From IMG/VR virus record IMGVR_UViG_3300032268_000832, positions 1 to 64,000 of that record: DNA of 64,000 nt. The stretch is one strand, 5' to 3'. Shown here piece after piece: positions 1 to 13,700 of this stretch. The notes beneath the pieces were generated by a model. The model made no database searches and had not been told where the DNA came from. It saw only the letters and a program-made list of their open reading frames with translations. Numbering within the stretch: the first letter of the stretch is position 1; each line of letters starts with the position of its first letter. Made by a program: the position numbers and the translations under genes.

Positions 1-22
1 TAATCAATTAAATAATTTTATT

Positions 23-631: not shown

Positions 632-671
632 TTTATTTCCATTCTATATATTTATTTATTTCTGAAAAAAT

Positions 672-700
672 CGACACTACTATTTGGTAGTGTCGGTTTT
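672..700 (+). terminator. intrinsic terminator overlapping the -33 box of the next promoter
   Basis: CGACACTAC-tatttg-GTAGTGTCG followed by TTTT. Confidence 0.7.
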
Positions 701-738
701 ATTCTTACCTTTGCACCACCAATTTAAAATAAAATGTT

Positions 739-1038
739 ATGGAACTATTAGTAGAACACATTGAATTAAACCACCCTTTGGCAAATGAGAATAGTACTTA
801 TAATGTCTTTTTAAAAGACAAGAAAGCCAAAAAACCTATCTTTGTTGCAGTTGAGAATAACGGAAAACAAAGACTTGAATTTGAGTTGTCAGGCGACCAT
901 AAATTGATTGCCAAGAATTTTAGAAAAGTAATTTTACAATATAGACTTGGTACTTTTACCGATGAAGACCAAGTAACCCTTGCTGATATTTTTATGTACG
1001 GCAAATTTAACTTATTGATTGACCATAACGTTAATTAA
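739..1038 (+). CDS. hypothetical early protein (99 aa)
   Basis: ATG 26 nt after promoter; followed by hairpin. Confidence 0.8.
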   Translation: MELLVEHIELNHPLANENSTYNVFLKDKKAKKPIFVAVENNGKQRLEFELSGDHKLIAKNFRKVILQYRLGTFTDEDQVTLADIFMYGKFNLLIDHNVN

Positions 1039-1055
1039 TTTAATTGGTGTGAACT

Positions 1056-1085
1056 TCCCGCAGAAATGCGGGATTTTCTTTTTAT
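1056..1085 (+). terminator. intrinsic terminator
   Basis: TCCCGC-agaaat-GCGGGA plus T-rich tail. Confidence 0.7.
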
Positions 1086-1165
1086 AAAAAAAAATGTTAA
1101 AATTTTTGGTAGTGTAAAATAATTGTTATACATTTGTATCGTTAAACCAATTAAATTATATCGTT

Positions 1166-1489
1166 ATGGATTATGTTAATAAAGTTCTTATTTCACTGAC
1201 CGACAATTATGGGTTTGAGTTTGGTAAGAATTACAAAGTTGTTTCTGACAATGGTCGAGAATTAGAATTTGAGAACGGACAACGTTTCTTCAAAGATAGA
1301 ATTGATTTGCATTTTGGCAAAAACTATTCAGAACTATTTGCCAAAGTAAAATATATTGTTGATACCAAAGAAATAGAAAACCATAAATTGTGTATTGAAA
1401 ATATTAGATTGGATAATAGAGTTATCAATAACAAAAAGAAGTTTGCCGAGAACGATAAGTATATCAACCGACTTAAAAAACTTTTGTAA
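1166..1489 (+). CDS. hypothetical early protein (107 aa)
   Basis: ORF behind promoter-leader repeat. Confidence 0.8.
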   Translation: MDYVNKVLISLTDNYGFEFGKNYKVVSDNGRELEFENGQRFFKDRIDLHFGKNYSELFAKVKYIVDTKEIENHKLCIENIRLDNRVINNKKKFAENDKYINRLKKLL

Positions 1490-1551
1490 ATATATTTGGT
1501 AGTGTAAAATATTTGTTATATCTTTGCATAGTTAAACCAATTAAATTAGTT

Positions 1552-1833
1552 ATGGCACATTCAAAAGAATTAATAGCTTTCAAAAAAAGTTTTGAAACCA
1601 ATACAAATATTAAAGTTTTTGGTGTTGAAGAAAATAGAACTTATTATCATTGGAAACGATTGATATTACCAAGTTTAAATTGTCAGGATATGTTAAAAGT
1701 TTCAAACTACATTTCAAACAATTTTTCAACACCAAATAAATTTACTCACTTACAAGTTTCATTGGGAACATATAATGGTAATTTAACCTTAACTTGTGAT
1801 GTTACATATATTAAAGAATTTATTATTAAATAA
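1552..1833 (+). CDS. hypothetical early protein (93 aa; start moved from 1513 to ATG 1552)
   Basis: The track's TTG start lies inside the promoter; ATG 1552 follows the conserved leader. Confidence 0.75.
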   Translation: MAHSKELIAFKKSFETNTNIKVFGVEENRTYYHWKRLILPSLNCQDMLKVSNYISNNFSTPNKFTHLQVSLGTYNGNLTLTCDVTYIKEFIIK

Positions 1834-1839
1834 CCCAGT

Positions 1840-1854
1840 GTACACATTTGTGTC
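1840..1854 (+). promoter_or_regulatory. second-class palindromic motif GTACACATTTGTGTC (also at 8743-8757, 11638-11652, variant 12108-12122)
   Basis: Interrupted palindrome ACACA-TT-TGTGT, 32-35 nt upstream of an ATG in three copies. Confidence 0.55.
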
Positions 1855-1886
1855 ATACACGTATAACCAATTAAATTAAATGACTT

Positions 1887-2306
1887 ATGTATGAAGTTAA
1901 TGAGATAGTAAAAGATTTAATAAAAACCGAAACAGGTATTGATATAAACGAAACAAGCCGATTAAGACCGATAGTTGAAATACGTTCACTTTATTATAAA
2001 ATAGTAAGGGAATTAGCACCAACACAAAGTTATCATCTTATTGGTAAGAGTGTGAAAAAAGACCACGCAAGCGTTATGTATGGTATTGCACAATTTGAGT
2101 TATATGCCAAGTATAATAAGCGTTTAATGTTACATTATCATAATATTAAAAATGCGTTCCTTAAACTTTATGACCATAACAATATTATTGCTTTGGATAT
2201 GGAAATTCAAATATTGGAGTATAAAATAAAAATGCTTAAAGAAAAAAGACTTGAATTAATTAATGCAACAATATTAGAGAATGGTGTTTCTGAACAGCAA
2301 GGGTAA
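1887..2306 (+). CDS. DnaA C-terminal (domain IV)-like HTH protein
   Basis: SRLRPIVEIRSLYYKIVRE...IGKSVKKDHASVMYG resembles the DnaA domain IV signature (IG..F.RDHTTV.HA). Confidence 0.6.
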   Translation: MYEVNEIVKDLIKTETGIDINETSRLRPIVEIRSLYYKIVRELAPTQSYHLIGKSVKKDHASVMYGIAQFELYAKYNKRLMLHYHNIKNAFLKLYDHNNIIALDMEIQILEYKIKMLKEKRLELINATILENGVSEQQG

Positions 2307-2394
2307 GGATTGGTATATTATAAAGGGATATAAAATATGGGCGGAAAGCAAAGAACAAGCCGAACAATTATATGAAAAAATAAAAAATTTTTAA
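2281..2394 (+). CDS. small hypothetical protein (37 aa, MVFLNSKGKDWYIIKGYKIWAESKEQAEQLYEKIKNF)
   Basis: Hand-translated; overlaps the previous gene's end and fills the gap before the next promoter. Confidence 0.45.
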   Translation: MVFLNSKGKDWYIIKGYKIWAESKEQAEQLYEKIKNF

Positions 2395-2462
2395 TAATAA
2401 ATTTGGTATATTAAAAAATTGTTATATATTTGCACTCACAAACCAATTAAATTTATTATATT

Positions 2463-2732
2463 ATGACAAGACAATTTACTGAAAGAATTGAATACAAAGG
2501 CACACGCTTTGAATCTAAAGTGGGTGTTGAATTTGACCAAGAAAATTGGAATGAGCTTTGGAATAAGGGTGTTATGAATGAAAACCAAATTGTATTGGCA
2601 AATGATTGGGAAACCACTTTTCCACCAAACAAATGGGGTACAAAGTATTCAAAGTATATGTATAGTGCAACGCTTGACAGATTAAGAGCGTGTACCTTTG
2701 GCGAGTTTTATGGTGGTGGTATCGTTGATTAA
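2463..2732 (+). CDS. hypothetical early protein (89 aa)
   Basis: ORF behind promoter-leader repeat. Confidence 0.8.
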   Translation: MTRQFTERIEYKGTRFESKVGVEFDQENWNELWNKGVMNENQIVLANDWETTFPPNKWGTKYSKYMYSATLDRLRACTFGEFYGGGIVD

Positions 2733-2744
2733 ATTAAATGACTT

Positions 2745-2951
2745 ATGAAACTATTAAAAAAATTAGTCAATTTAAACACTGGGTATTGGCTTGAAACACG
2801 TTTATATCAATACAAAGGTAAACTTGAAATTGGTTATGTTCTTTATCAAGGATATACCATATTTGGAATAAATGGTAAAGATAGAATTAATGTTTATGTT
2901 GATTTAAAAGACGCTAAAGAAGATTTAGAAAAACTTAATTTAACTGATTAA
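2745..2951 (+). CDS. hypothetical early protein (68 aa)
   Basis: Preceded by short leader ATTAAATTAAATGACTTATG. Confidence 0.75.
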   Translation: MKLLKKLVNLNTGYWLETRLYQYKGKLEIGYVLYQGYTIFGINGKDRINVYVDLKDAKEDLEKLNLTD

Positions 2952-2963
2952 ATTTAATAACTT

Positions 2964-3257
2964 ATGAAAAATAAAGAATTTGGGTTAGTATTAGATTTAA
3001 CTTGGTTAGAAACCAATGAAAGTGTGTTTGCAATATTGGAACGATTTGCAATTAATTTTTATCGTTTTGTTAATAACAAACACGAAATTAAATTAAATGA
3101 CGATAAAGATAAATTATGCGAGTTTCTTAAATCAAATAATATTGATTTCACTTGTGAAGTTAGCAGAGCAGATGAAAAAGATTTTTGGGTTTCATTTGAA
3201 TTAAAAGCTGATACCTATTTAGACGTTACAGACCGAATTGAATTAAGAGCAAGATAA
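2964..3257 (+). CDS. hypothetical early protein (97 aa)
   Basis: Preceded by ATTAAATTTAATAACTTATG leader. Confidence 0.75.
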   Translation: MKNKEFGLVLDLTWLETNESVFAILERFAINFYRFVNNKHEIKLNDDKDKLCEFLKSNNIDFTCEVSRADEKDFWVSFELKADTYLDVTDRIELRAR

Positions 3258-3269
3258 ATTAAATGGCTT

Positions 3270-3437
3270 ATGTTATACGATGAAAATAACCGAGTTATGA
3301 TTAACTCAATTAGTGAAGTAAACAACGCTAAATATAGAGTATCACTAAAAAGAAAAATTAGAAAATTTATACCTAAAGTATTACATAGTTCAATTAATAA
3401 TTTAAGTACAGAAACTTTAGAAAATATTTCATTTTAA
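3270..3437 (+). CDS. hypothetical early protein (55 aa, below track cut-off)
   Basis: Leader ATAAATTAAATGGCTTATG; hand translation MLYDENNRVMINS...ENISF. Confidence 0.6.
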   Translation: MLYDENNRVMINSISEVNNAKYRVSLKRKIRKFIPKVLHSSINNLSTETLENISF

Positions 3438-3508
3438 TATAAAAATATTTGGTAGTTTAAAATATTGTTATATCTTTGCACTCACAAACCAATTAAATTA
3501 AATGTATT

Positions 3509-4006
3509 ATGGAAAATTCAATTTTAAATTACGACTTAACAACATTAAAAAATATTGTTAATAAAAAAAATGTTAATGAAATTATTTTTAAAATTTTTGA
3601 TGACGATAAAAAACCAAATTGGACACCATTAATAAAAGTGGCTACTTTAAAAAAGAAAAGAGAAGAAAATTTAAGATACAATGGGGTTGTTAGTTCGTTT
3701 AATTCTAATGACGATTATAAGTTAGCTAAACTACTTATCAATAGTGGTGCTGATTTAAACTATCAAGATAAAAACGGAAATACCGCTTTGATTTATTGTG
3801 TTTATTATAATAATATTAAATTATTAAAATTATTAATTAAGTCAGGTGCTGATTTGAACATAAAAGATAATAATGGTTCAAGTGCATTAATAATTGCGGG
3901 TTATTCAAATAAATTTAATATTGGCGACATTTTAATTAAGTCAGGTGCTGACCAAAGAATAAAAAATAATAACGGAGATAATTATAGTATCTTTTTAAAT
4001 AAATGA
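3509..4006 (+). CDS. ankyrin-repeat protein
   Basis: Repeats LLINSGADLNYQDKNGNTAL / LLIKSGADLNIKDNNGSSAL / ILIKSGADQRIKNNNG. Confidence 0.9.
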   Translation: MENSILNYDLTTLKNIVNKKNVNEIIFKIFDDDKKPNWTPLIKVATLKKKREENLRYNGVVSSFNSNDDYKLAKLLINSGADLNYQDKNGNTALIYCVYYNNIKLLKLLIKSGADLNIKDNNGSSALIIAGYSNKFNIGDILIKSGADQRIKNNNGDNYSIFLNK

Positions 4007-4299
4007 AATACATAGACGATTTAAGTTTCTCAAACATTATCAATTTGATACAAGGAGAAGAAATAAAAGGTGCTGATATTCTAAATAATATCGCACACGA
4101 AATGGAAGAAAATAATAAAATAATTGAAAAACTTGAAAGCGATTTGGCTCGTGCTAAAAGTCGTAAAGGTGTTTTAATTGAAGGTTCTCAAAGAGTATTA
4201 CAACACTTGAAAAAAGAATATCCGTTAGCAGTTCAAAGGAATGGTTACATAGTTGTGGTTACAAAAGAAAAAATATCAATTGAACGCAATGTCTTGTAG
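4003..4299 (+). CDS. hypothetical protein (98 aa, coiled-coil), followed by attC-like hairpin
   Basis: ORF track; overlaps ankyrin gene stop. Confidence 0.7.
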   Translation: MKYIDDLSFSNIINLIQGEEIKGADILNNIAHEMEENNKIIEKLESDLARAKSRKGVLIEGSQRVLQHLKKEYPLAVQRNGYIVVVTKEKISIERNVL

Positions 4300-4304
4300 C
4301 ATTA

Positions 4305-4440
4305 CTGCCAACGTTTGATGATTGTATTAGTAGCGTTCTAAAATTACCAAACGTTTCAGATTAAAAATTAGATTACAATAAAACGCAAAACATTAAATTA
4401 TTCACAAACGTAGCTATTGATACAATTATTTGTTAGTAGC
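4305..4440 (+). mobile_element. solo attC-like inverted-repeat element
   Basis: CTGCCAAC-gttt-[18 bp stem 4317-4334 / 4413-4430, four G-T pairs]-t-GTTAGTAG. Confidence 0.5.
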
Positions 4441-4460
4441 TGTGTTTAAATTCAAAAATT

Positions 4461-4688
4461 ATGGAAAAATCAGCAGTACAATTTTTAGTGATAAAATTAG
4501 AAGAATTAATGTTAAAAAATGACTTCAATGAAATTTCAGATGAAGAATATTTGAAAGAAAAAGAAAATATTTTGATTATATCTAAACATAAAGAAAAAGA
4601 AAATATGATTAACTTTTTAAAGTCAGTTTTTCAACAAGAAAATTTTGATTATGAAAAAGCTTATAACGATTTTTTAAAACAAAAGTAA
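4461..4688 (+). CDS. hypothetical protein (75 aa)
   Basis: ORF starts 20 nt after the attC-like site. Confidence 0.75.
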   Translation: MEKSAVQFLVIKLEELMLKNDFNEISDEEYLKEKENILIISKHKEKENMINFLKSVFQQENFDYEKAYNDFLKQK

Positions 4689-4689
4689 A

Positions 4690-4887
4690 ATGATAAAAGT
4701 AAATTTAAAATTAATTAGTGAATTTCTCCCGTCAAAAGAAGAAGAAATTGAAATTACATTAGCTGAAATTATTGAATTAGCTAAAGAAAAAATAAAAAAT
4801 CAATATGAAAATGATGTTTATAATACTATTATTTATAAAGGATTTTCTTTTACAGATTCATTAAAAGAAAAAGAAGATATAAAATAA
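4690..4887 (+). CDS. hypothetical protein (65 aa)
   Basis: Tightly coupled ORF. Confidence 0.65.
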   Translation: MIKVNLKLISEFLPSKEEEIEITLAEIIELAKEKIKNQYENDVYNTIIYKGFSFTDSLKEKEDIK

Positions 4888-4944
4888 TTTTTTTATTTCG
4901 GAAATATTTCATATATTTGCATAACAATTTAAAAACAAATAGAA

Positions 4945-5400
4945 ATGAAACTAATAAAAATGACAGATTATATTTCACAAAAAAGAGATATAATAGACGA
5001 AGAAATGAGTAACGAAGACAGATTAACTATTTTACAATGTATTTTTGATTATAGTAAATTTTTAAAGACACCCTTAAAGTTAGATATGTTTATCCCTTGT
5101 GATGAAAAAATGAACATTTTAAAAAAACCTAAAAACAAAAGTAATTTAGGTAGTGGAAAAACTGATAGCGTTGAATTGTTAAAATACGAAAACAAGTTAA
5201 GAGATTACAGTTTTGCACTATCAAAGGTGTTATTTAAAGATTTTCATTTACACAAAGATGATGAAGATAACTTTAAAAAATGTGTTGCTACTCCTGGTTT
5301 TGTTTTACCATTTGAAGTATTATACACAATGAAAATTGAGGATATAGTTGATAACGATATTAAACTTACAAGTTTCGGACTTGCCACAATACATCAATAA
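4945..5400 (+). CDS. hypothetical protein (151 aa)
   Basis: ORF after a degenerate TAtaTTTG promoter. Confidence 0.8.
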   Translation: MKLIKMTDYISQKRDIIDEEMSNEDRLTILQCIFDYSKFLKTPLKLDMFIPCDEKMNILKKPKNKSNLGSGKTDSVELLKYENKLRDYSFALSKVLFKDFHLHKDDEDNFKKCVATPGFVLPFEVLYTMKIEDIVDNDIKLTSFGLATIHQ

Positions 5401-5509
5401 TTTAGTATAGTGTTTGTCGAAAATAAATAAAAAAGTTTTTAATAATTGTTTGGTAGTTTAATTAATTGTTATATATTTGCACTCACAAACCAATTAAATT
5501 TATTTAGTT

Positions 5510-5716
5510 ATGAGCAAATATCAAACAAAAATAGTTGACGCATTAAAAAACGGAGCTAAATTACAATGCACAGAGGGTGCTAATTATAAAACGTGGTTAG
5601 TTTACCCTAATGGTAAAATAGAAAATATTAGACGTGATTCAGCAAATAAAGTTTGTTTAGATTATGAAAATAAATTAGTGTTTGGGTTAAATGAGGGTAT
5701 AAGTTGGAAAAAATAA
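5510..5716 (+). CDS. hypothetical early protein (68 aa)
   Basis: ORF behind promoter-leader repeat. Confidence 0.8.
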   Translation: MSKYQTKIVDALKNGAKLQCTEGANYKTWLVYPNGKIENIRRDSANKVCLDYENKLVFGLNEGISWKK

Positions 5717-5726
5717 TTTTAATAAA

Positions 5727-5933
5727 ATGGAAGTCAAGTTAAAAAATGATGGCGAAAAAACCCCTAAAAGTATTCAAGCTGAAATTGAATTGAATAATAA
5801 AACAGATGATTGGGGTTATTTTAATCTTAAAATAATTGGATATGGAGGGAATGTTACACACGCTAAAATTAACTTAAAATATCAAATAGATGATTTAATT
5901 ACTGAACTACAAAATTTTAAAAATAGTTTATAA
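5727..5933 (+). CDS. hypothetical protein (68 aa)
   Basis: ORF track, A-rich leader. Confidence 0.7.
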   Translation: MEVKLKNDGEKTPKSIQAEIELNNKTDDWGYFNLKIIGYGGNVTHAKINLKYQIDDLITELQNFKNSL

Positions 5934-6003
5934 TTTATAATCTATACACACCAATATAGTTAAATTTTCGTTTTTTCAGTATATTTATATATAAAAAAAT
6001 AGT

Positions 6004-6264
6004 ATGGAAAACGAAATGAGAAAACACATTGACAAGTTTAATAATTTTATTAAAGAAGATATTATTAATAAAGGGGTTAAAACATCAACTAGGTTAGTTC
6101 AAGTTGATTATGAAGGTAAAAAAATGAACGCTGTTGCTATTGGATACGCATCTGGTCCTTATTTTAAGGAAGTTTATTATTTATTAGACGATATTCAATA
6201 TGATAATAATGATTTTAATAATGTAAAAGAAATTAATGGCTCGGATTTAATTATTGGTAGTTAA
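6004..6264 (+). CDS. hypothetical protein under a late-type promoter (86 aa)
   Basis: ATATTTAT at 5981-5988; N-terminus MENEMRKHIDKFNNFIKE ends in I-x-E. Confidence 0.75.
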   Translation: MENEMRKHIDKFNNFIKEDIINKGVKTSTRLVQVDYEGKKMNAVAIGYASGPYFKEVYYLLDDIQYDNNDFNNVKEINGSDLIIGS

Positions 6265-6280
6265 TTTTTTTTGGTATTAT

Positions 6281-6368
6281 ATAAATTAAATAACCCACTT
6301 AAAAAAAAGTGGGTTATTTATTTGGTATATTAAAATATTGTTATATCTTTGCACTCACAAACCAATTA
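6281..6368 (+). repeat. 88 bp perfect direct repeat, copy 1 (terminator + promoter + leader)
   Basis: Identical to 11033-11120; contains hairpin AATAACCCACT/AGTGGGTTATT. Confidence 0.9.
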
Positions 6369-6426
6369 TAAAAGTACAAAACAGAAAACAAATTAATAAC
6401 CAAAGCCTTAATTGCTACAATATATT

Positions 6427-6717
6427 GTTATGCATTCGGCTTTTTATCCACAATTATTATGGCAATTAAAATAGATGAATCACAGGAATATTTATTTGAA
6501 AAAAATCAAAATGTATGTGTTGTAGGTAAATTTCCAATCAATGCGACAAGATTATTTGTAACTAAACAAAAGAAAATAATAAAAGGCTATTGCACTTCTT
6601 GGTGGCAAAATGGTGGTCATTTTAAATCTTCTTTTTTGATTCTAAACGAAAGTTGCTCACAAGCTGATGCATAACGTTTTGCGTATAAAAAATCGTTTTA
6701 ATGTTTTTTATACGATG
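6427..6717 (+). mobile_element. integron-cassette-like unit 1 (one ORF plus attC-like hairpin)
   Basis: Starts GTTATGCATTCGGCTT; the gene ends in the complementary AAGCTGATGCATAAC (stop TAA inside TAAC); 11 bp stem 6682-6692/6704-6714; next GTT at 6717. Confidence 0.6.
6459..6674 (+). CDS. cassette-borne hypothetical protein (71 aa)
   Basis: Stop codon embedded in the TAAC inverse-core-like box. Confidence 0.7.
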   Translation: MAIKIDESQEYLFEKNQNVCVVGKFPINATRLFVTKQKKIIKGYCTSWWQNGGHFKSSFLILNESCSQADA

Positions 6718-6909
6718 TTATAAGATAGTATTTTTTGTGATAAAAGAAGCACCAAATGGTTGCTCAATGTAAAGATACCAACAATAAGGGTAGCGGGTGT
6801 ACAAAAGACCGTTTTAATACTATTTCGTTGGGTTTGGGTGGATGAAACTATAACTGCGGTTGAAACGTACCGTTCACAAAAAATATTTTTTATAACTAAT
6901 ATATGTTAT
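6717..6909 (+). mobile_element. integron-cassette-like unit 2 (non-coding or mini-ORF cargo)
   Basis: Start GTTATAAGATAGTATTTTTTGTG (6717-6739) pairs with end CACAAAAAATATTTTTTATAAC (6875-6896); followed by GTTAT at 6905. Confidence 0.55.
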
Positions 6910-7046
6910 TAATATTTGTTAACATTAATGAAATCAATACTTTAGTATAGTGTTTGTCGAAAATAGATAAAAAAGTTTTCTAAATATTTGGTAGTTTAAA
7001 ATATTGTTATATCTTTGCATCGTTAAACCAATTAAATTATATCGTT

Positions 7047-7205
7047 ATGAGTTCAAATAAAATGATTAAAAAATTATTATCAATAAATAATAATTATAAT
7101 AAAAAATGGTTAAAATCTTTATCTAAAGATTATTTAAACAAATTACTTATTGATAATATGATTATATCACAAGGTTGTCAAAATAAATTGATGTTAAATT
7201 TTTAA
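7047..7205 (+). CDS. hypothetical early protein (52 aa)
   Basis: ATG directly after promoter-leader 6987-7046; hand-translated. Confidence 0.55.
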   Translation: MSSNKMIKKLLSINNNYNKKWLKSLSKDYLNKLLIDNMIISQGCQNKLMLNF

Positions 7206-7219
7206 TTTTAAAATTAATT

Positions 7220-7630
7220 ATGGCTACAATAGAAAAAAAAGAATTTGCTTTATCACAATTAGCACCTTATTACGCTAACCCAAGCACTTGTGGGTATGAT
7301 AAAGAAAAGAAAACTTGTGAATACCTTACAACCGATGGGCGTATGTGTGTTGCAGGAAAGAATATGATTGAACCTAAAATTGGTTTAGTCAAGGGTATTG
7401 ATGATATACTTGCTGATTTAGACCACGAACAAGAGGGTTTATTTAAACCCGAAGTTGTTGGAATTTTAACATCAGTTGAATGGCGACGTATGCAATGTAT
7501 TCACGATAGTATTGCATTAGAACCAAACGACAAAGTTAGACTTAAAGTAACAATATTGCGATTAAATTTATTCACGATTGAAGAATTTGAGGAACGTGCA
7601 GAATTATTAAAAAATAATTTGGTAGTTTAA
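7220..7630 (+). CDS. hypothetical protein (136 aa)
   Basis: ORF track; Cys motifs CGY, CEY, CVAG. Confidence 0.8.
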   Translation: MATIEKKEFALSQLAPYYANPSTCGYDKEKKTCEYLTTDGRMCVAGKNMIEPKIGLVKGIDDILADLDHEQEGLFKPEVVGILTSVEWRRMQCIHDSIALEPNDKVRLKVTILRLNLFTIEEFEERAELLKNNLVV

Positions 7631-7677
7631 ATAATTGTTATATCTTTGCACTCACAAACCAATTAAATTAAATTGAT

Positions 7678-7956
7678 ATGAATTTAGTAGATAAAAGCGA
7701 ATTAGGAAATATTGAAGAAACTAAAATAATAGAATATAAAAATGGTGTTATTCAAGGTATTAAATTAGTTAGAACTAAAGCAACAGGGGAAGTTAGAACA
7801 CAATATATTGCTTATTTAAAACATAGTGTTTACCCAAGTGGAATTTTACGTTTTGAAACTTGTTTAAATGGTGGTGTTATTACAAACGTAAATCAAGCAA
7901 TTAACCAAGCAAAAATATTTGTTGATTGGAAAACAACAAAAGATTTGGTAAATTAA
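7678..7956 (+). CDS. hypothetical early protein (92 aa)
   Basis: ORF behind promoter-leader repeat. Confidence 0.8.
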   Translation: MNLVDKSELGNIEETKIIEYKNGVIQGIKLVRTKATGEVRTQYIAYLKHSVYPSGILRFETCLNGGVITNVNQAINQAKIFVDWKTTKDLVN

Positions 7957-8005
7957 AATAATTGTTATATCTTTGCACTCACAAACCAATTAAAACACTT
8001 AAACA

Positions 8006-8221
8006 ATGAAAAAATTAGTAGTATTATTTATCGTTTCAATAACATTCGTTTCTTGTTATTCAACCAAAGAAATTGTTGATGTACCATTAAAAGATGTTTA
8101 CATTCAATATAAAGAAACTAAATATCAAGTGTATAGATGTAGTGATAAATTTAATTATATTCTTAAATTAGACAAAAAAGGTAGATTGATTAGACAACAA
8201 GTTTATCTTGGTATAAAATAA
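8006..8221 (+). CDS. putative lipoprotein (71 aa)
   Basis: MKK + hydrophobic stretch + lipobox FVS-C17. Confidence 0.7.
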   Translation: MKKLVVLFIVSITFVSCYSTKEIVDVPLKDVYIQYKETKYQVYRCSDKFNYILKLDKKGRLIRQQVYLGIK

Positions 8222-8273
8222 ATATTTTTATATATTTGCACTCACAAACCAATTAAATTAAATTAAATGTATT

Positions 8274-8597
8274 ATGGCAGTTACTAATAGATACGCAAAA
8301 AGACTTCTTTTGGTTGATGAACTAATCAAGTTGAAGTATGATGTTTCCCCGAAGAAAATTAGTCCAAGAAAAAAGAGTTATATTATATCGAAAGATAATA
8401 TAATTTATAGAATGGATTTTAATACTGATTGGGTTACAATTAATCAAGACCAAGATAAATTGTATTGCGGAATAAATTTATTGAGTGGTAAAAGAATTGC
8501 TAATTGTATGGATAATCATTTGGTAAAGTTATTTAATGATGTTGTAGGTATTTTATATAATAAAACTAATATTAACGTACCAACAATTATTTTATAA
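8274..8597 (+). CDS. hypothetical early protein (107 aa)
   Basis: ORF behind promoter-leader repeat. Confidence 0.8.
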   Translation: MAVTNRYAKRLLLVDELIKLKYDVSPKKISPRKKSYIISKDNIIYRMDFNTDWVTINQDQDKLYCGINLLSGKRIANCMDNHLVKLFNDVVGILYNKTNINVPTIIL

Positions 8598-8663
8598 AAA
8601 TATTTGTGAGTGTAAATTATTTGTTATATATTTGCACTCACAAACTAAATTATTCAGTTATAT

Positions 8664-8741
8664 ATGAAAACTAAAAAAATTAAATGGCACAAATATTTTA
8701 TTGTTGCCTTTGGTATATGGTTAATAAATTTATTATCATAG
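8664..8741 (+). CDS. small membrane peptide (25 aa, MKTKKIKWHKYFIVAFGIWLINLLS)
   Basis: Has its own promoter (8603-8634); basic N-terminus plus hydrophobic helix. Confidence 0.55.
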   Translation: MKTKKIKWHKYFIVAFGIWLINLLS

Positions 8742-8825
8742 TGTACACATTTGTGTCTATTACGCGTAGTACTCATTAAATTAAATTATATGACAACGAT
8801 ATATAAACCAACAAATTAAAAAAAA

Positions 8826-9152
8826 ATGAAAGTATTAACAGCAGAATTAGTAGCATCGAATAAAAGAGAACGAATCTCTGGCGGTGTCTACATTGAATTT
8901 GAAACAACTGAAAATGTGAAAAAAGATGACTACTTTAAAGTAAAAGTAGAAGACTTTAGTTATGATTTTCAAGCAAATGGAGTAAAAGTAGAAGGGGATA
9001 AATTGAAAGTAACAGCAAGAGAAGTTGGATATTGGGCACAAAAACTTGACAGAAAGGGCGTTGATTTGAGATTAGTTATCGGAAGCGATGTAATTGCTGT
9101 TACTGATGAATCAGAAAAGTCTAAAATATACGAAAGGTCTTGTTGGTGTTAA
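8826..9152 (+). CDS. hypothetical protein (108 aa)
   Basis: ORF track. Confidence 0.8.
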   Translation: MKVLTAELVASNKRERISGGVYIEFETTENVKKDDYFKVKVEDFSYDFQANGVKVEGDKLKVTAREVGYWAQKLDRKGVDLRLVIGSDVIAVTDESEKSKIYERSCWC

Positions 9153-9169
9153 CAAATGTATTTAATTAT

Positions 9170-9224
9170 GGTAAAGTAAAATAATTGTTATATCTTTGCA
9201 CTCACAAAACCAATTAAATTTATT
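9170..9224 (+). repeat. 55 bp perfect direct repeat, copy 1 (copy 2 at 9617-9671), flanking one gene
   Basis: GGTAAAGTAAAATAATTGTTATATCTTTGCACTCACAAAACCAATTAAATTTATT in both copies. Confidence 0.9.
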
Positions 9225-9229
9225 CAGTT

Positions 9230-9610
9230 ATGATAATACAAATAAAACAATACAAATATGAGAAGACCGAAACGTCTTCAATGGATTTAGAGTTGCCAGA
9301 AGAAACGACTTATTTTTTTGAAACTCACGTTAGACGTTCAATAAGAATTAAACCCATATTCACAACGTGGAACAAGGTACGATACGACAAAGAAGAAGAA
9401 TTGTATTATTTTGAGGTTACTTGTGTTTATTTGTCTTCTAAATGTAAGATTGAGAAGTTTAGAGTTAATTTAGACGATTTCAAAAAAGATAAAGAGGTAA
9501 TTCAAAAGGATAACTTTTTAAATGCGTGGGTTAATGATTGGTTTGACAAGCGAACCAAAGAGCAGTTTGATGTTGATTTGAAAATAGCTATTGATAAAAT
9601 AAATGAATAA
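9230..9610 (+). CDS. hypothetical early protein (126 aa)
   Basis: ORF behind promoter-leader repeat. Confidence 0.8.
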   Translation: MIIQIKQYKYEKTETSSMDLELPEETTYFFETHVRRSIRIKPIFTTWNKVRYDKEEELYYFEVTCVYLSSKCKIEKFRVNLDDFKKDKEVIQKDNFLNAWVNDWFDKRTKEQFDVDLKIAIDKINE

Positions 9611-9676
9611 TTATTTGGTAAAGTAAAATAATTGTTATATCTTTGCACTCACAAAACCAATTAAATTTATTGTATT

Positions 9677-10066
9677 ATGAAAATCAATTTAGTAGAAGTA
9701 CCAAGACCAATGGTAAGCAGTTTTATGATGTTTGCTGAACCTGACTTAAATTTATTAAGAGAAACCAAAACAATAAGAGTTTCTTTTCATCACATTACCA
9801 AAACAAGAATTTCAACAAGTATTCAGTTTGGAGAATATTGTGTTAAAGCCAATAAATTTATTGACGGATATAAAATGCACAAAGACGTACAATGGAATCA
9901 TTTTAGTAGCGGACAACAAACAAGCCATTATTTTGTTAAATCAAAAAAACAAAATTATGATGTTTATAAAGAGTTTGTCATTAAATTAATTGAGAGCGTA
10001 ATAAAAGATAATTTCAAAATGGAATTAGACGAAATTACCATTAATTTGGAACAAAGAGAATTTTAA
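9677..10066 (+). CDS. hypothetical early protein (129 aa)
   Basis: ORF behind promoter-leader repeat. Confidence 0.8.
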   Translation: MKINLVEVPRPMVSSFMMFAEPDLNLLRETKTIRVSFHHITKTRISTSIQFGEYCVKANKFIDGYKMHKDVQWNHFSSGQQTSHYFVKSKKQNYDVYKEFVIKLIESVIKDNFKMELDEITINLEQREF

Positions 10067-10149
10067 CAAAATTTTAACATTTTCCCACTTGTATTAGTGG
10101 GAAATTGTTTTACCTTTGCACTCACAAAACCAATTAAATTTATTGAATT

Positions 10150-10614
10150 ATGAAAAAAGTATTATTAGTATCAGTATTATTTTTAGTTTCTACATTAACA
10201 TTTTCACAATGTTATAGAAGTAAAAGAAATTACGATAGAGAAAGTCATTTTGGACTTGTTGCTAACATCGGTACACTTAAATCATTAGGTGGCGAAATTT
10301 ACGTTAAATTTAATAACCATATAATCGGTGGCGGTTATGCAGGGGAAATTAATGGTGCTAAAGTGGTATCAGAAGAATTTAAAAACGAAACACTATATTT
10401 AACCTATGGTTATCAATATGAAAAATATACCTTTGGTGTTAGATATGGTAAACAAAATAAAGCAAGTTGGATTGATACAACTACAAAAGAAGTAACTCCT
10501 TATTCAACAATGGTTGGCGGTTATATGGGTTACAATTTTACGAATAAAGTTGCTATTAATTTAGGTTACGATACATTTAGCCAAGTAACAATAGGTATTG
10601 TTATGGGGTTATAA
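10150..10614 (+). CDS. secreted, outer-membrane beta-barrel-like protein (154 aa)
   Basis: Sec signal MKKVLLVSVLFLVSTLTFS|Q; alternating G/Y/aliphatic strands (YLTYGYQY, YTFGVRYG, VAINLGY). Confidence 0.6.
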   Translation: MKKVLLVSVLFLVSTLTFSQCYRSKRNYDRESHFGLVANIGTLKSLGGEIYVKFNNHIIGGGYAGEINGAKVVSEEFKNETLYLTYGYQYEKYTFGVRYGKQNKASWIDTTTKEVTPYSTMVGGYMGYNFTNKVAINLGYDTFSQVTIGIVMGL

Positions 10615-10662
10615 ACAATAAAATTAATATCCATAATGTTAATTTGATTTAAAGTTGATTTG

Positions 10663-10700
10663 AATAAGGGTTGTTAAATTTAACAATCCTTATTTTTTTT
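10663..10700 (+). terminator. intrinsic terminator
   Basis: AATAAGGGTTGTTA-aatt-TAACAATCCTTATT plus T run. Confidence 0.75.
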
Positions 10701-10775
10701 TTTAGTATTTGTTTGGTATATTAAAATATTGTTATATATTTGCATAGAATTAATAACCAATTAAATTAAATCATT

Positions 10776-11033
10776 ATGGGACACGAACAATTATTTAACG
10801 CATCAGAGCAACAACTTGCAGATTTTTGTCAAGCAAACATTAACAACAAAATGCAGTTAACACTCAAAGGACAAGGCAATTTTAAACACATTTCAGCAGT
10901 AGGATTGAATATTTGTTGTGTAAGTGTTAGAATGCTCGGGAAAGATAGTTATTATTACTTTGGTTGTATTAGAGCGCATATATATAACGAACTATTATAT
11001 AAGTTTGACCATAGACATAAACGCAGAAGTTAA
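10776..11033 (+). CDS. hypothetical early protein (85 aa)
   Basis: ORF behind promoter-leader repeat. Confidence 0.75.
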   Translation: MGHEQLFNASEQQLADFCQANINNKMQLTLKGQGNFKHISAVGLNICCVSVRMLGKDSYYYFGCIRAHIYNELLYKFDHRHKRRS

Positions 11034-11120
11034 TAAATTAAATAACCCACTTAAAAAAAAGTGGGTTATTTATTTGGTATATTAAAATATTGTTATATCT
11101 TTGCACTCACAAACCAATTA
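11033..11120 (+). repeat. 88 bp perfect direct repeat, copy 2
   Basis: Identical to 6281-6368. Confidence 0.9.
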
Positions 11121-11132
11121 AATTATTTAGTT

Positions 11133-11261
11133 ATGAAATCAATTTCAGTTTCTTTTTACGCTAAAACTTCTGACAACAAAGAAGTTAAATTAGAACAAAA
11201 TCCGTTTGTTGAAGTGTATCTTAAAACACCAAAAGAAACAACCCTTATTTGTGTTAATTAA
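11133..11261 (+). CDS. hypothetical early protein (42 aa; start corrected)
   Basis: The track's start at 11061 lies in the terminator; ATG 11133 follows the leader. Confidence 0.6.
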   Translation: MKSISVSFYAKTSDNKEVKLEQNPFVEVYLKTPKETTLICVN

Positions 11262-11281
11262 CCCAATAAATTAAATGACTT

Positions 11282-11548
11282 ATGAATGTAGATAATAAAC
11301 TAATAGCAGAATTTTTAGGTTACTCACAACCGCACCCTGATTATCCTGATACAACATATTGGTATAAAAAAGACTTTCCACCACTTACAATATTATCTTT
11401 TGACACTGATTGGAATTGGTTAATACAAGTAGTAAAAAAGATTGAGAGTTTGAACAAATTAGATAGTGTATTAATAAACACTGACATCAAAGAAGTTTAC
11501 AACGCTTGTGTAGAATTTATTAAGTGGTATAACGAACAACCTAAATAA
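11282..11548 (+). CDS. hypothetical protein (88 aa)
   Basis: Leader AAATTAAATGACTTATG. Confidence 0.8.
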   Translation: MNVDNKLIAEFLGYSQPHPDYPDTTYWYKKDFPPLTILSFDTDWNWLIQVVKKIESLNKLDSVLINTDIKEVYNACVEFIKWYNEQPK

Positions 11549-11559
11549 ATTAAATCACT

Positions 11560-11631
11560 ATGAAAAAATTAATTATTATAAAAGCAGTTATATTACTTGT
11601 AGTGATACTATTAATCTATCTTTTAAGATAA
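11560..11631 (+). CDS. small membrane peptide (23 aa, MKKLIIIKAVILLVVILLIYLLR)
   Basis: Leader AAATTAAATCACTATG; almost wholly hydrophobic. Confidence 0.55.
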   Translation: MKKLIIIKAVILLVVILLIYLLR

Positions 11632-11686
11632 GGTTATGTACACATTTGTGTCTATTACGTATATAACCAATTAAATTTAATGAATT

Positions 11687-11977
11687 ATGTCAGAATTAGT
11701 AACCAATAGCACCACAGATAATAAATTGATGTGGAGAGTAAATACACCTCAATTACTTAAAGAAATTATGCAAAATAATGAAGTGGCAATATTATCAAAA
11801 CCACTTGAAATATTTGCTACAATACTTGCAGAAGTAGGGGAAAGAGCAAGTGAATTAAATGACCCTAAATTAAACGCTCTTATGTGTCGTTTGGCAATAT
11901 ATGAAGTTGCAGACCCATACGACAAAGAATATAATTCAGAGTTAACCAATGATACAATAAAAAAAGGATACCAATAA
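11687..11977 (+). CDS. hypothetical protein (96 aa)
   Basis: Follows the second-class motif and leader. Confidence 0.8.
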   Translation: MSELVTNSTTDNKLMWRVNTPQLLKEIMQNNEVAILSKPLEIFATILAEVGERASELNDPKLNALMCRLAIYEVADPYDKEYNSELTNDTIKKGYQ

Positions 11978-12006
11978 ATTAAACCACAACCAACACAACA
12001 ACCAAG

Positions 12007-12030
12007 AAACGCCCCAAAAGGGCGTTTTTT
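12007..12030 (+). terminator. terminator closing the early array
   Basis: AAACGCCC-caaaa-GGGCGTTT plus T run. Confidence 0.8.
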
Positions 12031-12141
12031 TATTGTTTAAAGCGTTTTTATTCAAAAATGGTATATTGATACCAAAATTAATTAAACGTGCCTTAAAACG
12101 TATGTATGTACACTTTTGTGTCAGCGCCCACGTGCAAGGCA

Positions 12142-12269
12142 AATAAATTAAACCTCGTGAATAAATTAAACCTCGTGAATAAATTAAACCTCGTGAATAA
12201 ATTAAACCTGATGAATTAAACCTGATGAATTAAACCTGATGAATTAAACCTGATGAATTAAACCTGATG
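12142..12269. repeat. iteron-like tandem repeats (core AATTAAACCT x8)
   Basis: 3x AATAAATTAAACCTCGTG, 1x AATAAATTAAACCTGATG, 4x AATTAAACCTGATG; AT-rich tract at 12270-12323. Confidence 0.9.
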
Positions 12270-12323
12270 AATAAATTTATTTAGTTATTGCAGCATAAAA
12301 TAATAAATAAATAAATTTATTAT

Positions 12324-12537
12324 CACGTATGCGTGTAGCGTGTGTATGTGTGTGTATGTATGCGTGTAGCGTGTGTATGTGTGTGTATGTATGTGCGTAG
12401 CGTGTGTATGTGTGTGTATGCGTGTGTATGCGTGTGTATGCGTGTGTATGCGTGTGTATGCGTGTGTATGTGTGTGTATGCGTGTGTATGCGTGTGTGCG
12501 TAGCGTGTGTGCGTAGCGTGTGTGTGCGTATGCGTGT
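12324..12537. repeat. alternating purine-pyrimidine (TG/CG/TA) microsatellite-like tract
   Basis: Units TATGCGTGTAGCGTGTGTATGTGTGTGTATG and CGTGTGTATG repeated. Confidence 0.9.
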
Positions 12538-12674
12538 TGATTATTATTAAATTAATAACACTAAAAAAAAATTTAAAGTTTTTTATCTTTTTTGTTGTAT
12601 ATTAAATTTATTTTATATCTTTGCGGTGTTCAAAAAGAACGAAATTAAATTTTTAATCATTAAATTCTTACATT

Positions 12675-13235
12675 ATGGAAAATCAAGTTTTAAGAGTTAC
12701 AGAATTAGAGTTAAGCGAAATTTTAAAAAATTTCAAAGTTGTTAAGGGTATGGCGGTTTTTGGTACTATCTTCCAAACTACTATACCAAAAGCGTTAGTA
12801 AAAGATAGAATTACAAAAGAAAAAAACCCTTTTGCGGTTATTCAAAAGCAAAGTAAAGTAAGTTGTATTTTTAACGCTGATTACGAAAAGCAAGTTGTTA
12901 ATCAATTAAAGCGTGAAGATAAACCCGAAACTGATTACCACAAAGGTAATGCGGTTATGGAATTAGAATTTTTTGGTAATAATGACTTTTTTTGTAGAAA
13001 TGTAAAAAATCAAAAATCGGTTGTTAGATACCGACCAAATGACAATGTTAAACCTACTACGGAATATTTTGCTGATGATAAAAAAGTAAGTTTTGAACAA
13101 GTTAAAAATTTGTTGCCTGAAACAAGTAAAGCGACAAATCAAGGTACTGAAAGAGAAATTTTATGGCGAACAATTTATCTTTCAAACATAAACGAAATAA
13201 CGATAAATAAAGTTAAGTATATCGTTATAAGATAA
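12675..13235 (+). CDS. hypothetical protein (186 aa)
   Basis: Own TAtcTTTG promoter (12616-12623) and terminator (13243-13273). Confidence 0.85.
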   Translation: MENQVLRVTELELSEILKNFKVVKGMAVFGTIFQTTIPKALVKDRITKEKNPFAVIQKQSKVSCIFNADYEKQVVNQLKREDKPETDYHKGNAVMELEFFGNNDFFCRNVKNQKSVVRYRPNDNVKPTTEYFADDKKVSFEQVKNLLPETSKATNQGTEREILWRTIYLSNINEITINKVKYIVIR

Positions 13236-13242
13236 TAAATTT

Positions 13243-13273
13243 AATAAGGGCTAAATTTTAGCCCTTATTTTTT
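13243..13273 (+). terminator. intrinsic terminator
   Basis: AATAAGGGCTAA/TTAGCCCTTATT plus T run. Confidence 0.8.
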
Positions 13274-13660: not shown

Positions 13661-13700
13661 AAAAAAGAGGCACCATATTAGCACCTCTTTCTTAGAAAAA

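What the first reader, a model, noticed from the sequence alone, without database searches (positions are those of the whole stretch)
683..12674. Early gene array where nearly every gene has its own copy of a promoter-leader module
Seen: ~19 TTTG..TAnnTTTG promoters in 12 kb, mostly followed by CACTCACAAACCAATTAAATT and a small orphan ORF, all on one strand; some modules also carry a terminator hairpin over the -33 box (672-700, 10081-10104). Known: this is the Bacteroidota sigma70 consensus, and T4-type PeSL cassettes and the SPO1 host-takeover module are organised this way. Inference: this is an immediate-early host-takeover/anti-defence library that may also act as an RNA polymerase sink.
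Basis: partly seen in the sequence, partly recalled or inferred. Interest (0 to 1): 0.7.

Follow-up and report, generated by a model that had tools for sequence, protein, structure and literature searches.

The report
Shuffling promoter-leader gene cassettes in a phage
A giant T4-like phage from lake water, probably infecting Bacteroidota, carries a one-way row of small unknown genes; about half have their own near-identical host-type promoter and leader, and related phages gain, lose and swap genes exactly at these repeats, as in the known PeSL cassettes of T4-type phages.

Summary
Window 1-12674 has 18 copies of a ~60-nt module, plus one cut by the contig start. All are on the + strand and occur nowhere else in the 306-kb record. 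Each has a Bacteroidota-type promoter (TTTG, 19 nt, TAnnTTTG), a conserved spacer, and an SD-less leader ending 25-35 nt downstream at an ATG.

"Nearly every gene" is overstated: 18 of 34 ORFs have their own module. Three have a second conserved box plus the leader, and five have the leader alone.

The phage is a T4-like jumbo myovirus from freshwater metagenomes. A relative 92-99% identical in flanking DNA differs by seven insertions or replacements in 12 kb. Every boundary lies in a module, box or leader, and three show 10-42 nt of overlap inside the shared element.

Across 80 related contigs there are 316 modules on one strand and 2 on the other. They precede 113 unrelated ORF families at a fixed distance, with variable neighbours.

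This is the Bacteroidota counterpart of the PeSL cassettes of T4-type phages: a new variant of a known kind. No data here test early timing, host-takeover function or an RNA polymerase sink.

The parts
1..22 (+). 3' part of a module leader, cut by the contig start; precedes ORF 23-631
   Evidence: G001 and an environmental contig (X16) carry a full module directly upstream of this sequence.
672..738 (+). Hairpin 672-695 with the -33 TTTG (683-686) in its loop, then -7 box 706-713 and leader; precedes ORF 739-1038
   Evidence: In G001 a 344-nt cassette sits here between two modules, and the window holds one hybrid module.
1056..1073 (+). Terminator-like hairpin just before a module
1105..1165 (+). 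Module (promoter plus leader) before ORF 1166-1489
1495..1551 (+). Module before ORF 1552-1833; left boundary of a gene replacement relative to G001
1840..1886 (+). Box 2 (15-mer GTACACATTTGTGTC) plus leader before ORF 1887-2306; right boundary of the same replacement
2402..2462 (+). Module before the four-gene unit 2463-3437; G001 has a 255-nt extra cassette at its leader
3448..3508 (+). Module before the ankyrin-repeat ORF 3509-4006
5449..5509 (+). Module before ORF 5510-5716
6287..6377 (+). Terminator hairpin 6287-6320 plus a module with a divergent leader; the next ORF starts at 6459
6987..7046 (+). Module before ORF 7047-7205
7618..7677 (+). Module before ORF 7678-7956
   Evidence: X5 lake contig joins 3999 to 7613.
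7944..8005 (+). Module before ORF 8006-8221; right boundary of the 4,666-nt window-specific block 3273-7938
8207..8273 (+). Module with a degenerate -33 (CTTG) before ORF 8274-8597
8603..8664 (+). Module whose -33 flank and first transcribed bases form a perfect 10-bp inverted repeat; G001 has a 263-nt extra cassette here
8743..8800 (+). Box 2 plus leader-like sequence; left boundary region of a 789-nt replacement
9167..9229 (+). Module with a degenerate -33 before ORF 9230-9610
9614..9676 (+). Module before ORF 9677-10066; right boundary of the 789-nt replacement
10081..10149 (+). Hairpin 10081-10104 in place of the -33 region, then -7 box and leader, before ORF 10150-10614
10662..10775 (+). 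Terminator hairpin 10662-10695 plus module before ORF 10776-11033
11039..11132 (+). Terminator hairpin 11039-11072 plus module before ORF 11133-11261
11638..11686 (+). Box 2 plus leader before ORF 11687-11977
12004..12030 (+). Strong intrinsic terminator closing the last cassette
12108..12122 (+). Fourth box 2 copy, conserved with its flanks in all four relatives; no gene follows it here
12591..12674 (+). Last, more divergent promoter of the series, before the conserved ORF 12675-13235

Best explanation
The region is the hyperplastic, probably early, region of a T4-like jumbo phage that most likely infects a Bacteroidota host. Its repeated unit is a self-contained expression cassette head. This head has an optional terminator hairpin and a promoter for the host primary sigma factor (TTTG, 19 nt, TAHHTTTG). 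It also has a conserved A/T-rich spacer and a 21-31-nt SD-less leader (AAACCAATTAAAT type) that places A-rich sequence about 12-20 nt before the ATG. Each head drives one to four small, mostly orphan genes. Because 35-60 nt of near-identical sequence recurs in the same orientation between genes, the phage's homologous recombination can cross over between heads. The shorter leader and box 2 repeats serve the same way. Crossovers delete, insert or replace whole genes without breaking expression of the neighbours. This produces a population-wide pool of interchangeable cassettes on a partly conserved backbone order. Shown here: the repeat, its geometry, its restriction to this region, and the coincidence of every rearrangement boundary with a repeat. 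Inferred: promoter activity, early timing, and recombination as the cause.
For: Promoter reading. The match to -33/-7 has a 19-nt spacer and no G at the two variable -7 positions, as in the F. johnsoniae consensus, where G of the -7 box is at -5 (PMC6847099). The distance from the -7 box to the ATG is tight: 25-35 nt in the window and median 29, 10-90% range 26-31, over 305 cases. About 35 looser promoters of the same grammar lie 5-40 nt before ATGs in 190-306 kb. A different motif, ATATTTATA, precedes structural and other genes: 37 of 59 copies lie within 40 nt of a start, and only one copy is in the array. Host. SD-like motifs occur upstream of 0-3% of genes against a 4.2% background. The ClpB-like gene's best matches are almost all Bacteroidota, at 50-59%. 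The capsid protein is 39% identical to that of Flavobacterium phage immuto. A near-copy of the module precedes a gene in Elizabethkingia phage TCUEAP1. T4-like nature: gp23, gp20 and T4-type terminase. Cassette shuffling. Against G001 there are 7 events in 12 kb; all 14 boundaries lie in a module, box 2 or short leader, and three show 28, 10 and 42 nt of overlap inside the shared element. Seventeen of 33 ORFs are shared and collinear, and none are paralogous. Lake metagenomes show cassette-specific depth and alternative joins. The pan-array has 316 modules on one strand against 2 on the other and 113 ORF families, and 31 of 44 testable families have more than one successor. Extra conservation. 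Array modules carry 15.4 bits in the spacer against 8.3 in the other promoters, and 22.7 bits against 8.4 in -4..+25. Adjacent modules share private variants, such as the extra A at 9185, 9632 and 10105.
Against: There is no transcription start, timing or expression evidence. The RNA-library contigs are short, unstranded and could be DNA carry-over. Boundaries would be intergenic anyway if only intact genes survive selection, so coincidence with repeats does not by itself prove that the repeats cause the exchanges. De Bruijn contigs can misjoin at repeats longer than the word size, which weakens the metagenome joins. Only 7 of 18 window modules, and 39% of the pan-set, have a stable hairpin upstream, so the terminator half of the PeSL design is often missing. 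The host is inferred, not known.
Confidence: 0.7

Rival explanations
1. The modules are only duplicated strong promoters. Rearrangements happen anywhere, by illegitimate recombination or transfer, and the only survivors are those with intergenic boundaries, which in this region always contain a module.
For: Almost every intergenic space in the array holds a module, box 2 or leader, so the null of intergenic boundaries cannot be separated from boundaries in repeats. Some boundaries sit right at the ATG or stop codon (3272, 11286, 11980).
Against: Three events show 10-42 nt of shared sequence spanning the junction, with a single hybrid module where the relative has two. This is the footprint of homologous crossover. 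Neighbouring modules share private variants, which suggests conversion or unequal exchange. Spacer and leader positions that other promoters of the same phage do not conserve are conserved here.
Confidence: 0.15
2. The array-specific leader, and perhaps box 2, is primarily a tag read by a phage factor. This could be a translational repressor or endoribonuclease that shuts off this gene class, as RegA and RegB do for T4 early messages. The sequence is conserved for that reason, and recombination is a side effect.
For: The TTAAAT-type leader lies within 30 nt of the start in 71% of array genes but 8% of the other genes. It also precedes internal genes that have no promoter (2745, 2964, 3270, 11282). 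It is conserved in relatives at 70-85% identity.
Against: No RegA or RegB homologue was found in the record, which is 86% complete, and no candidate factor was identified. The leader's A-rich block at about -12 to -20 already fits general Bacteroidota translation signals (PMC6847099). This rival is compatible with the main explanation rather than exclusive of it.
Confidence: 0.2
3. The array acts mainly as a decoy that soaks up host RNA polymerase. The many strong promoters matter more than the genes they drive.
For: There are 18 or more consensus promoters in 12 kb, and at least 25 in 22.6 kb in G001.
Against: Every module sits at a fixed distance before an intact ORF, and 289 of 305 module-proximal ORFs are complete. 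The ORFs are kept at 78-100% identity between relatives. Terminators insulate the units. A pure sink would not need any of this, and nothing here measures polymerase occupancy.
Confidence: 0.05
4. The repeats are sites for a dedicated site-specific recombination system that captures cassettes, in the manner of an integron. Box 2 or the bracketing inverted repeats would be the recombination site.
For: The cassettes run strictly one way: 316 modules on one strand against 2 on the other. Box 2 is a conserved 15-mer with internal dyad symmetry, found only in the array in all four relatives: 16 copies, all on +. In 25 of 259 modules, the 6 nt after the -33 box are complementary to the 6 nt after the -7 box, against 10.6 +/- 2.8 when partners are permuted. 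This occurs in three co-varying sequence types.
Against: No integrase or recombinase was found among the array ORFs or the larger ORFs of G001's array. Crossover points vary in position within the module (-7 box, leader, ATG), as expected for homologous exchange and not for site-specific exchange. T4-like phages already have very active homologous recombination (general knowledge).
Confidence: 0.05

Closest known systems
PeSL (promoter-early stem-loop) cassettes of T4-type phages: RB49/phi1, T4/PST, KVP40/nt-1 (PMC2839356, PMC4122927)
   Same: Both are found in T4-like myoviruses, in hyperplastic regions of small ORFans. Both are a repeated composite of terminator hairpin, host-sigma promoter, translation signal and ATG. 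Indels and replacements between close relatives are bounded by the repeats, with crossovers inside them.
   Different: The promoter grammar is Bacteroidota -33/-7, not TTGACA/TATAAT. There is no Shine-Dalgarno; a conserved A/T-rich leader takes its place. A hairpin is present at only about 40% of units and sometimes overlaps or brackets the promoter. The density is higher, at 1.4 per kb. A second array-specific box can replace the promoter half. Mini-circles were not tested.
SPO1 host-takeover module
   Same: Both are a dense one-way cluster of small early genes, each or nearly each with its own strong host-type promoter.
   Different: The SPO1 module lies in the terminal redundancy of a Bacillus phage and uses sigma-A -35/-10 promoters and strong SD sites. 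No terminal repeat was found here, and the contig is incomplete. SPO1 is not known for repeat-bounded cassette exchange.
T4 early promoters with extended consensus (general knowledge)
   Same: Conservation extends beyond the two core boxes into the spacer and upstream A/T tract, and defines a phage-specific promoter subclass.
   Different: The sigma specificity differs. Here the conservation continues about 25 nt into the transcribed leader.
Promoter before TCUEAP1_46 of Elizabethkingia phage TCUEAP1 (MN732896.1, 39944-39994)
   Same: It is 82.7% identical over 51 nt to a window module, in an intergenic position with an ATG at the same distance. The host is a cultured member of Flavobacteriales.
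   Different: It is the only match found in that 50-kb phage record by a single blastn query, and no array was seen there.

Membership tests
PeSL regulatory cassettes of T4-type phages | Carried by a T4-like myovirus | tested here: met
   Pfam Gp23 (3.5e-71), Portal_T4 (5.8e-74) and Terminase_6N.
PeSL regulatory cassettes of T4-type phages | Concentrated in a hyperplastic region of small, mostly orphan genes | tested here: met
   34 ORFs with a median of 92 aa; 30 of 33 have no Pfam hit. Modules are absent from the other 294 kb.
PeSL regulatory cassettes of T4-type phages | Contains a near-consensus promoter for the host primary sigma factor | tested here: inconclusive
   The sequence fits the Bacteroidota consensus with a 19-nt spacer. 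No activity or start-site data exist, and the host is inferred.
PeSL regulatory cassettes of T4-type phages | Stem-loop (terminator) directly upstream of the promoter | tested here: inconclusive
   Present at 7 of 18 window modules and 110 of 280 in the pan-set; absent from the rest.
PeSL regulatory cassettes of T4-type phages | Shine-Dalgarno and start codon at the 3' end | tested here: not met
   No SD-like motif lies upstream of any array gene. The ATG is at a fixed distance behind a conserved A/T-rich leader instead. This is expected for a Bacteroidota host.
PeSL regulatory cassettes of T4-type phages | Indels and replacements between close relatives bounded by the elements, with crossover inside them | tested here: met
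   7 events with all boundaries in repeats; 3 have 10-42 nt of overlap. Population variants agree.
PeSL regulatory cassettes of T4-type phages | Formation of excised mini-circles during infection | not testable with these tools
   Needs inverse PCR or long reads from an infected culture.
SPO1-type host-takeover module | Located in the terminal redundancy and transcribed first by host polymerase | tested here: inconclusive
   No terminal repeat was found by blastn of the two ends. The record is linear, 86% complete and cut inside the array.
Integron-like cassette array | Adjacent site-specific recombinase and a defined recombination site per cassette | tested here: not met
   No recombinase domain in the array ORFs of the window or of G001. 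Crossover positions vary.

The most novel reading that the evidence does not exclude
The array-specific leader, the box 2 15-mer and the co-varying inverted repeats that bracket some promoters may together form a cis-acting code. An as yet unidentified phage factor would read this code, either to switch off the whole cassette class at a set time or to promote targeted capture of new cassettes. The array would then be a regulated, integron-like gene-acquisition platform, not a passive product of homologous recombination.
Probability: 0.12. Interest if true: 0.8.

Novelty: new variant of a known kind. Interest (0 to 1): 0.5.

Why it matters
It extends PeSL-type modular shuffling from Proteobacteria-infecting T4-type phages to a T4-like jumbo phage that most likely infects Bacteroidota, a phylum with a different sigma factor and no Shine-Dalgarno use. 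The same architecture appears to have been rebuilt in another transcription and translation grammar. This supports the view that it is selected as a way to carry and exchange accessory genes.

In practice, the 316 natural variants of one compact promoter plus leader, each tied to a real gene, are a ready-made parts list for expression in Flavobacteria. The 113 or more ORFan families behind them are a defined candidate set for host-takeover and counter-defence screens.

The repeats also explain why assemblies of these phages break here. All four related contigs end inside the array.

Tried and rejected
- Nucleotide search of 1-12700 against cultured phages found nothing.
- tRNA scan of the window found none.
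- Rfam on 1-14000 gave only sub-threshold chance hits.
- RegA (PF01818) and RegB (PF10715) were sought in the record; neither was found, and the controls did not ring either, so this is weak.
- PDB sequence search with two array proteins gave nothing.
- Flavobacterium phage immuto, the nearest cultured capsid relative, had one chance-like hit to the strict promoter pattern and no array.
- The 33-nt promoter half (up to 3 mismatches) was sought in 5 Bacteroidota genomes, and the strict -7-box-plus-leader pattern (no mismatches) in 301 sampled Flavobacteriaceae genomes. Neither gave a match, so the module is not a copy of a host promoter in those searched.
- RNA-library contigs were laid on 1-6000 in the hope of finding transcript ends. 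They are short, unstranded and low in depth, so they say nothing about start sites. The short-sided joints there (sides 24-26 nt) were rejected as repeat artefacts.
- Box 2 was tested as an RNA structure. It gives only a 4-bp stem with no compensatory change. As a general promoter class it was rejected, because it occurs nowhere outside the array.
- A terminal repeat that would place the array at a genome end was not found.


Full report
**What is in the sequence**

The window is the first 64 kb of a single 306,463-bp virus record. Between 672 and 12674, a unit of about 60 nt recurs on the + strand. It consists of:
- an A/T-rich run;
- TTTG, usually as TTTGGTAG;
- a 19-nt spacer with a conserved TAAAA..TTGTTA;
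- a -7 box of the form TAYMTTTG followed by CA;
- a leader, usually CTCACAAACCAATTAAATT or TCGTTAAACCAATTAAATT;
- about nine more bases, then ATG.

The two-box pattern matches 22 times in the window against 5.8 expected. A 16-nt core search finds 17 copies in 1123-12625 and no true copy elsewhere in the record. With the copy at 683 this gives 18. The first 22 bases of the window are the tail of a nineteenth. E. coli-type promoters are not enriched, at 107 against 97 expected. Terminator-like hairpins are enriched, at 16 against 3.8 expected. The + strand hairpins sit just before or over the -33 box of a module, or at the end of the array.

**How many genes have a module**

I count 34 ORFs from 23 to 13235, with a median length of 92 aa.

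| Upstream element | ORFs |
|---|---|
| Own module | 18 |
| Box 2 (15-mer GTACACATTTGTGTC) plus the same leader | 3 |
| Short leader only, often overlapping the previous stop codon | 5 |
| None of these | 7 |
| Module cut by the contig start | 1 |

So "nearly every gene" is too strong. The units are mono- to tetracistronic.

**What genome this is**

- Pfam finds T4 major capsid Gp23, T4 portal Gp20 and a T4-type large terminase in the window.
- The capsid protein is closest to those of an uncultured huge phage, a Microcystis phage and Flavobacterium phage immuto, at 39-44% identity.
- The DNA occurs in many freshwater lake metagenomes.
- The record is classed as linear and 86% complete. No terminal repeat is detectable.

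**Host**

Four lines point to Bacteroidota:
- SD-like motifs precede 0% of array genes and 2.9% of the others, below the 4.2% background. Lack of SD is a hallmark of the phylum (PMC6847099).
- About 35 more promoters of the TTTG/TAnnTTTG grammar lie 5-40 nt before start codons, mainly in 170-306 kb.
- The best cellular matches of the phage's ClpB-like gene are almost all Bacteroidota, at 50-59%, while other phyla reach 44-51%.
- The only cultured-phage match to a module is an intergenic sequence in Elizabethkingia phage TCUEAP1, with the same layout and ATG distance.

The host class remains unknown.

**Why the units are read as promoters plus leaders**

In F. johnsoniae the -7 element is TAHHTTTG with its G at -5, and A/T-rich tracts near -18 and -28 are prominent (PMC6847099). 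The modules obey these rules. They have no G at the two variable positions, and their spacers are A/T-rich. The predicted start is therefore in the CACTCAC stretch. The G-to-ATG distance of 25-35 nt then gives a 5' UTR of about 21-31 nt. The leader's AAA block would fall roughly 12-20 nt before the ATG, near the -11 to -14 zone that favours translation in this phylum.

A different motif, ATATTTATA, precedes many structural and other genes. Of 59 copies, 37 lie within 40 nt of a start, and only one copy is in the array. The two promoter-like classes largely divide the genome between them. This is what a temporal programme would look like. It is the only support for "early" timing here, and it is indirect.

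**The modules are a special subclass**

Compared with the phage's other promoters of the same grammar, the array modules carry more information:

| Region | Array modules | Other promoters |
|---|---|---|
| Spacer | 15.4 bits | 8.3 bits |
| -4 to +25 | 22.7 bits | 8.4 bits |

The TTAAAT-type leader lies within 30 nt of the start in 71% of array genes and 8% of the other genes. The 33-nt promoter half of a module found no match within three mismatches in 5 Bacteroidota genomes. The strict core-plus-leader pattern found none in 301 sampled Flavobacteriaceae genomes. So the module is not a borrowed host promoter in those searched.

**Comparison with relatives**

Motif scans and a core-gene search recovered three related fragments, G001, G002 and G003. 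G001 is 92-99% identical to the window in flanking DNA. Its contig carries at least 25 modules over 22.6 kb, of which 15.7 kb upstream of window position 1 has no counterpart in this record.

An environmental contig shows a full module directly before window position 1. All four contigs end inside the array. The array is therefore longer than what is held, and assemblies break on it.

Within the shared 12 kb, the window and G001 differ by seven insertions or replacements:

| Window coordinates | Difference from G001 |
|---|---|
| 706-733 | Extra 344-nt cassette in G001 |
| 1547-1838 | Gene replaced |
| 2448-2457 | Extra 255-nt cassette in G001 |
| 3273-7938 | 4,666 nt with 13 genes and 6 modules, replaced by one 184-nt gene |
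| 8640-8681 | Extra 263-nt cassette in G001 |
| 8822-9610 | 789-nt segment replaced (112 nt in G001) |
| 11287-11979 | 693-nt segment replaced (1,567 nt in G001) |

Every boundary lies in a module, a box 2 or a short leader. Three events show 28, 10 and 42 nt of sequence common to both sides. At 706-733 the window has one hybrid module where G001 has two. This is the footprint of homologous crossover between repeats.

Seventeen of 33 ORFs are shared with G001, in the same order. None has a paralogue within the array. Against the more distant G002, eight ORFs are shared and collinear, except for a moved DnaA-C-like gene.

**Population level**

In four lake DNA runs, contigs covering the array are short and end at modules. 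Depth differs between cassettes within a run: in X5, 2401-4000 is at about 38x and 4001-5400 at 0-5x. Alternative joins occur: X5 joins 3999 to 7613, and X11 joins gene 8006-8221 through a module to the ankyrin gene. These joins carry the usual caveat for de Bruijn contigs at repeats.

A metagenome scan found 76 more contigs with the module. Results over 80 sources and 347 kb:
- 316 modules lie on one strand and 2 on the other.
- 305 module-proximal ORFs fall into 113 families, 58 of them singletons.
- The box-to-ATG distance has a median of 29 nt.
- Of 44 families seen at least twice with a successor, 31 have more than one successor family.
- Some runs of order recur, which suggests a backbone with variable inserts.

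**Gene content**

Pfam finds an ankyrin-repeat protein (3509-4006). It also gives a DnaA C-terminal HTH-like match just under the curated threshold (1887-2306) and a weak OmpA-like barrel with a signal peptide (10150-10614). Nothing else in the array matches. PHROGs hits are to families without a named function. The larger ORFs of G001's extra array include GP88, DUF4241 and DUF932, but no recombinase. "Host takeover or anti-defence" is therefore a reasonable guess by analogy, not a finding.

**Finer features without a settled explanation**

- Box 2 has 16 copies in the four relatives, all on + and all in the array. It usually lies right after a stop codon. An ACGYGT-containing stretch follows it, and then the normal leader, so it takes the place of the promoter half. 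In G002 one copy lies between a -7 box and the leader. It folds into only a 4-bp stem, without covariation.
- In 25 of 259 modules, the six bases after the -33 TTTG are complementary to the six after the -7 TTTG, against 10.6 +/- 2.8 when partners are permuted. This comes in three co-varying types. The commonest type stands before 11 different gene families. The window copy is at 8603-8650.
- About 39% of modules have a stable structure upstream of or over the -33 box.

**Comparison with what is known**

The closest described system is the PeSL of T4-type phages: a composite of terminator hairpin, host-sigma early promoter, SD and ATG, concentrated in hyperplastic regions. It flanks the indels that distinguish close relatives, and it has been shown by inverse PCR to form mini-circles (PMC2839356, PMC4122927).

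The present array meets the phage type, location, orphan content and boundary criteria. It meets the hairpin criterion only in part. It lacks the SD, as expected for its host. Mini-circles could not be tested. A library search found no paper linking PeSLs with Bacteroidota phages, which is not proof that none exists. I therefore file it as a new variant of a known kind, working like PeSLs but written in Bacteroidota promoter and translation grammar.

**Verdict**

The PeSL analogy and variable gene content are supported. Early timing is plausible but indirect. Host-takeover function and the RNA polymerase sink are untested. Interest is moderate: the mechanism class is known, and the phylum, the grammar, the density and the size of the cassette pool are new.

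Noticed in passing
window 1840-1854, 8743-8757, 11638-11652, 12108-12122: A 15-mer (GTACACATTTGTGTC, with one T variant) occurs only in the array. It has 16 copies in four relatives, all on +, and usually replaces the promoter half in front of the normal leader. Its function is unknown.
   Followed up: partly
window 12142-12277 and 12327-12537: Two tandem arrays lie just after the array's terminator and the last box 2. The first has an 18-mer x3.8 and a 14-mer x5.2 that contain AATTAAACC, like the leader. The second is a GT-rich 10-mer x16. G001 has similar repeats; G002 and G003 have a module there instead.
   Followed up: partly
whole record; e.g. window 39130, 47650, 53540: The motif ATATTTATA lies within 40 nt upstream of 37 called starts, out of 59 copies. 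Most are in 12-190 kb, including terminase and other structural genes. It is a candidate phage-specific, possibly late, promoter, complementary in distribution to the host-type promoters.
   Followed up: partly
G000 170-306 kb (outside the window): A second region is rich in small + strand genes. It has about 35 looser TTTG-N19-TAnnTTTG promoters 5-40 nt before ATGs, without the array leader.
   Followed up: partly
window 8603-8650 and related loci: In some modules the -33 flank and the first transcribed bases are perfect inverted repeats, with compensatory changes between module types (GTGGTG/CACCAC, TGAGTG/CACTCA, TGGGTG/CACCCA).
   Followed up: partly
window 1; ends of G001, G002 and G003: All four related contigs end inside the array, and the window starts within a module leader. 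The repeats and the population heterogeneity break assemblies, so the array size is a lower bound.
   Followed up: yes
window 4300-4460 and 6675-6985: Two stretches in the window-specific block have no convincing ORF. The second is relatively G+C-rich. Neither has an Rfam match.
   Followed up: partly
window 1887-2306: A small array protein has a DnaA C-terminal HTH-like match (30 bits, cut-off 31.5). It is 100% conserved in G001. A 38% identical copy lies at a different array position in G002.
   Followed up: partly
window 33069-35570 (-): A full-length ClpB/ClpC-like two-ring AAA+ chaperone is encoded by the phage. Its closest cellular relatives are Bacteroidota, at 50-59%.
   Followed up: partly
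window 37253-38569: A thymidylate synthase of 438 aa aligns to a 266-position profile over residues 9-357, so it carries extra sequence.
   Followed up: no
window 13298-13660: A low-complexity stretch lies after ORF 12675-13235. It has a C-rich 11-mer repeat (13428-13459) and runs of A and T. The 85-aa ORF called there is doubtful.
   Followed up: no
L187 (MN732896.1 39944-39994): Elizabethkingia phage TCUEAP1 has one intergenic sequence 82.7% identical over 51 nt to a window module. It includes a similar leader, with the ATG at the same distance.
   Followed up: partly
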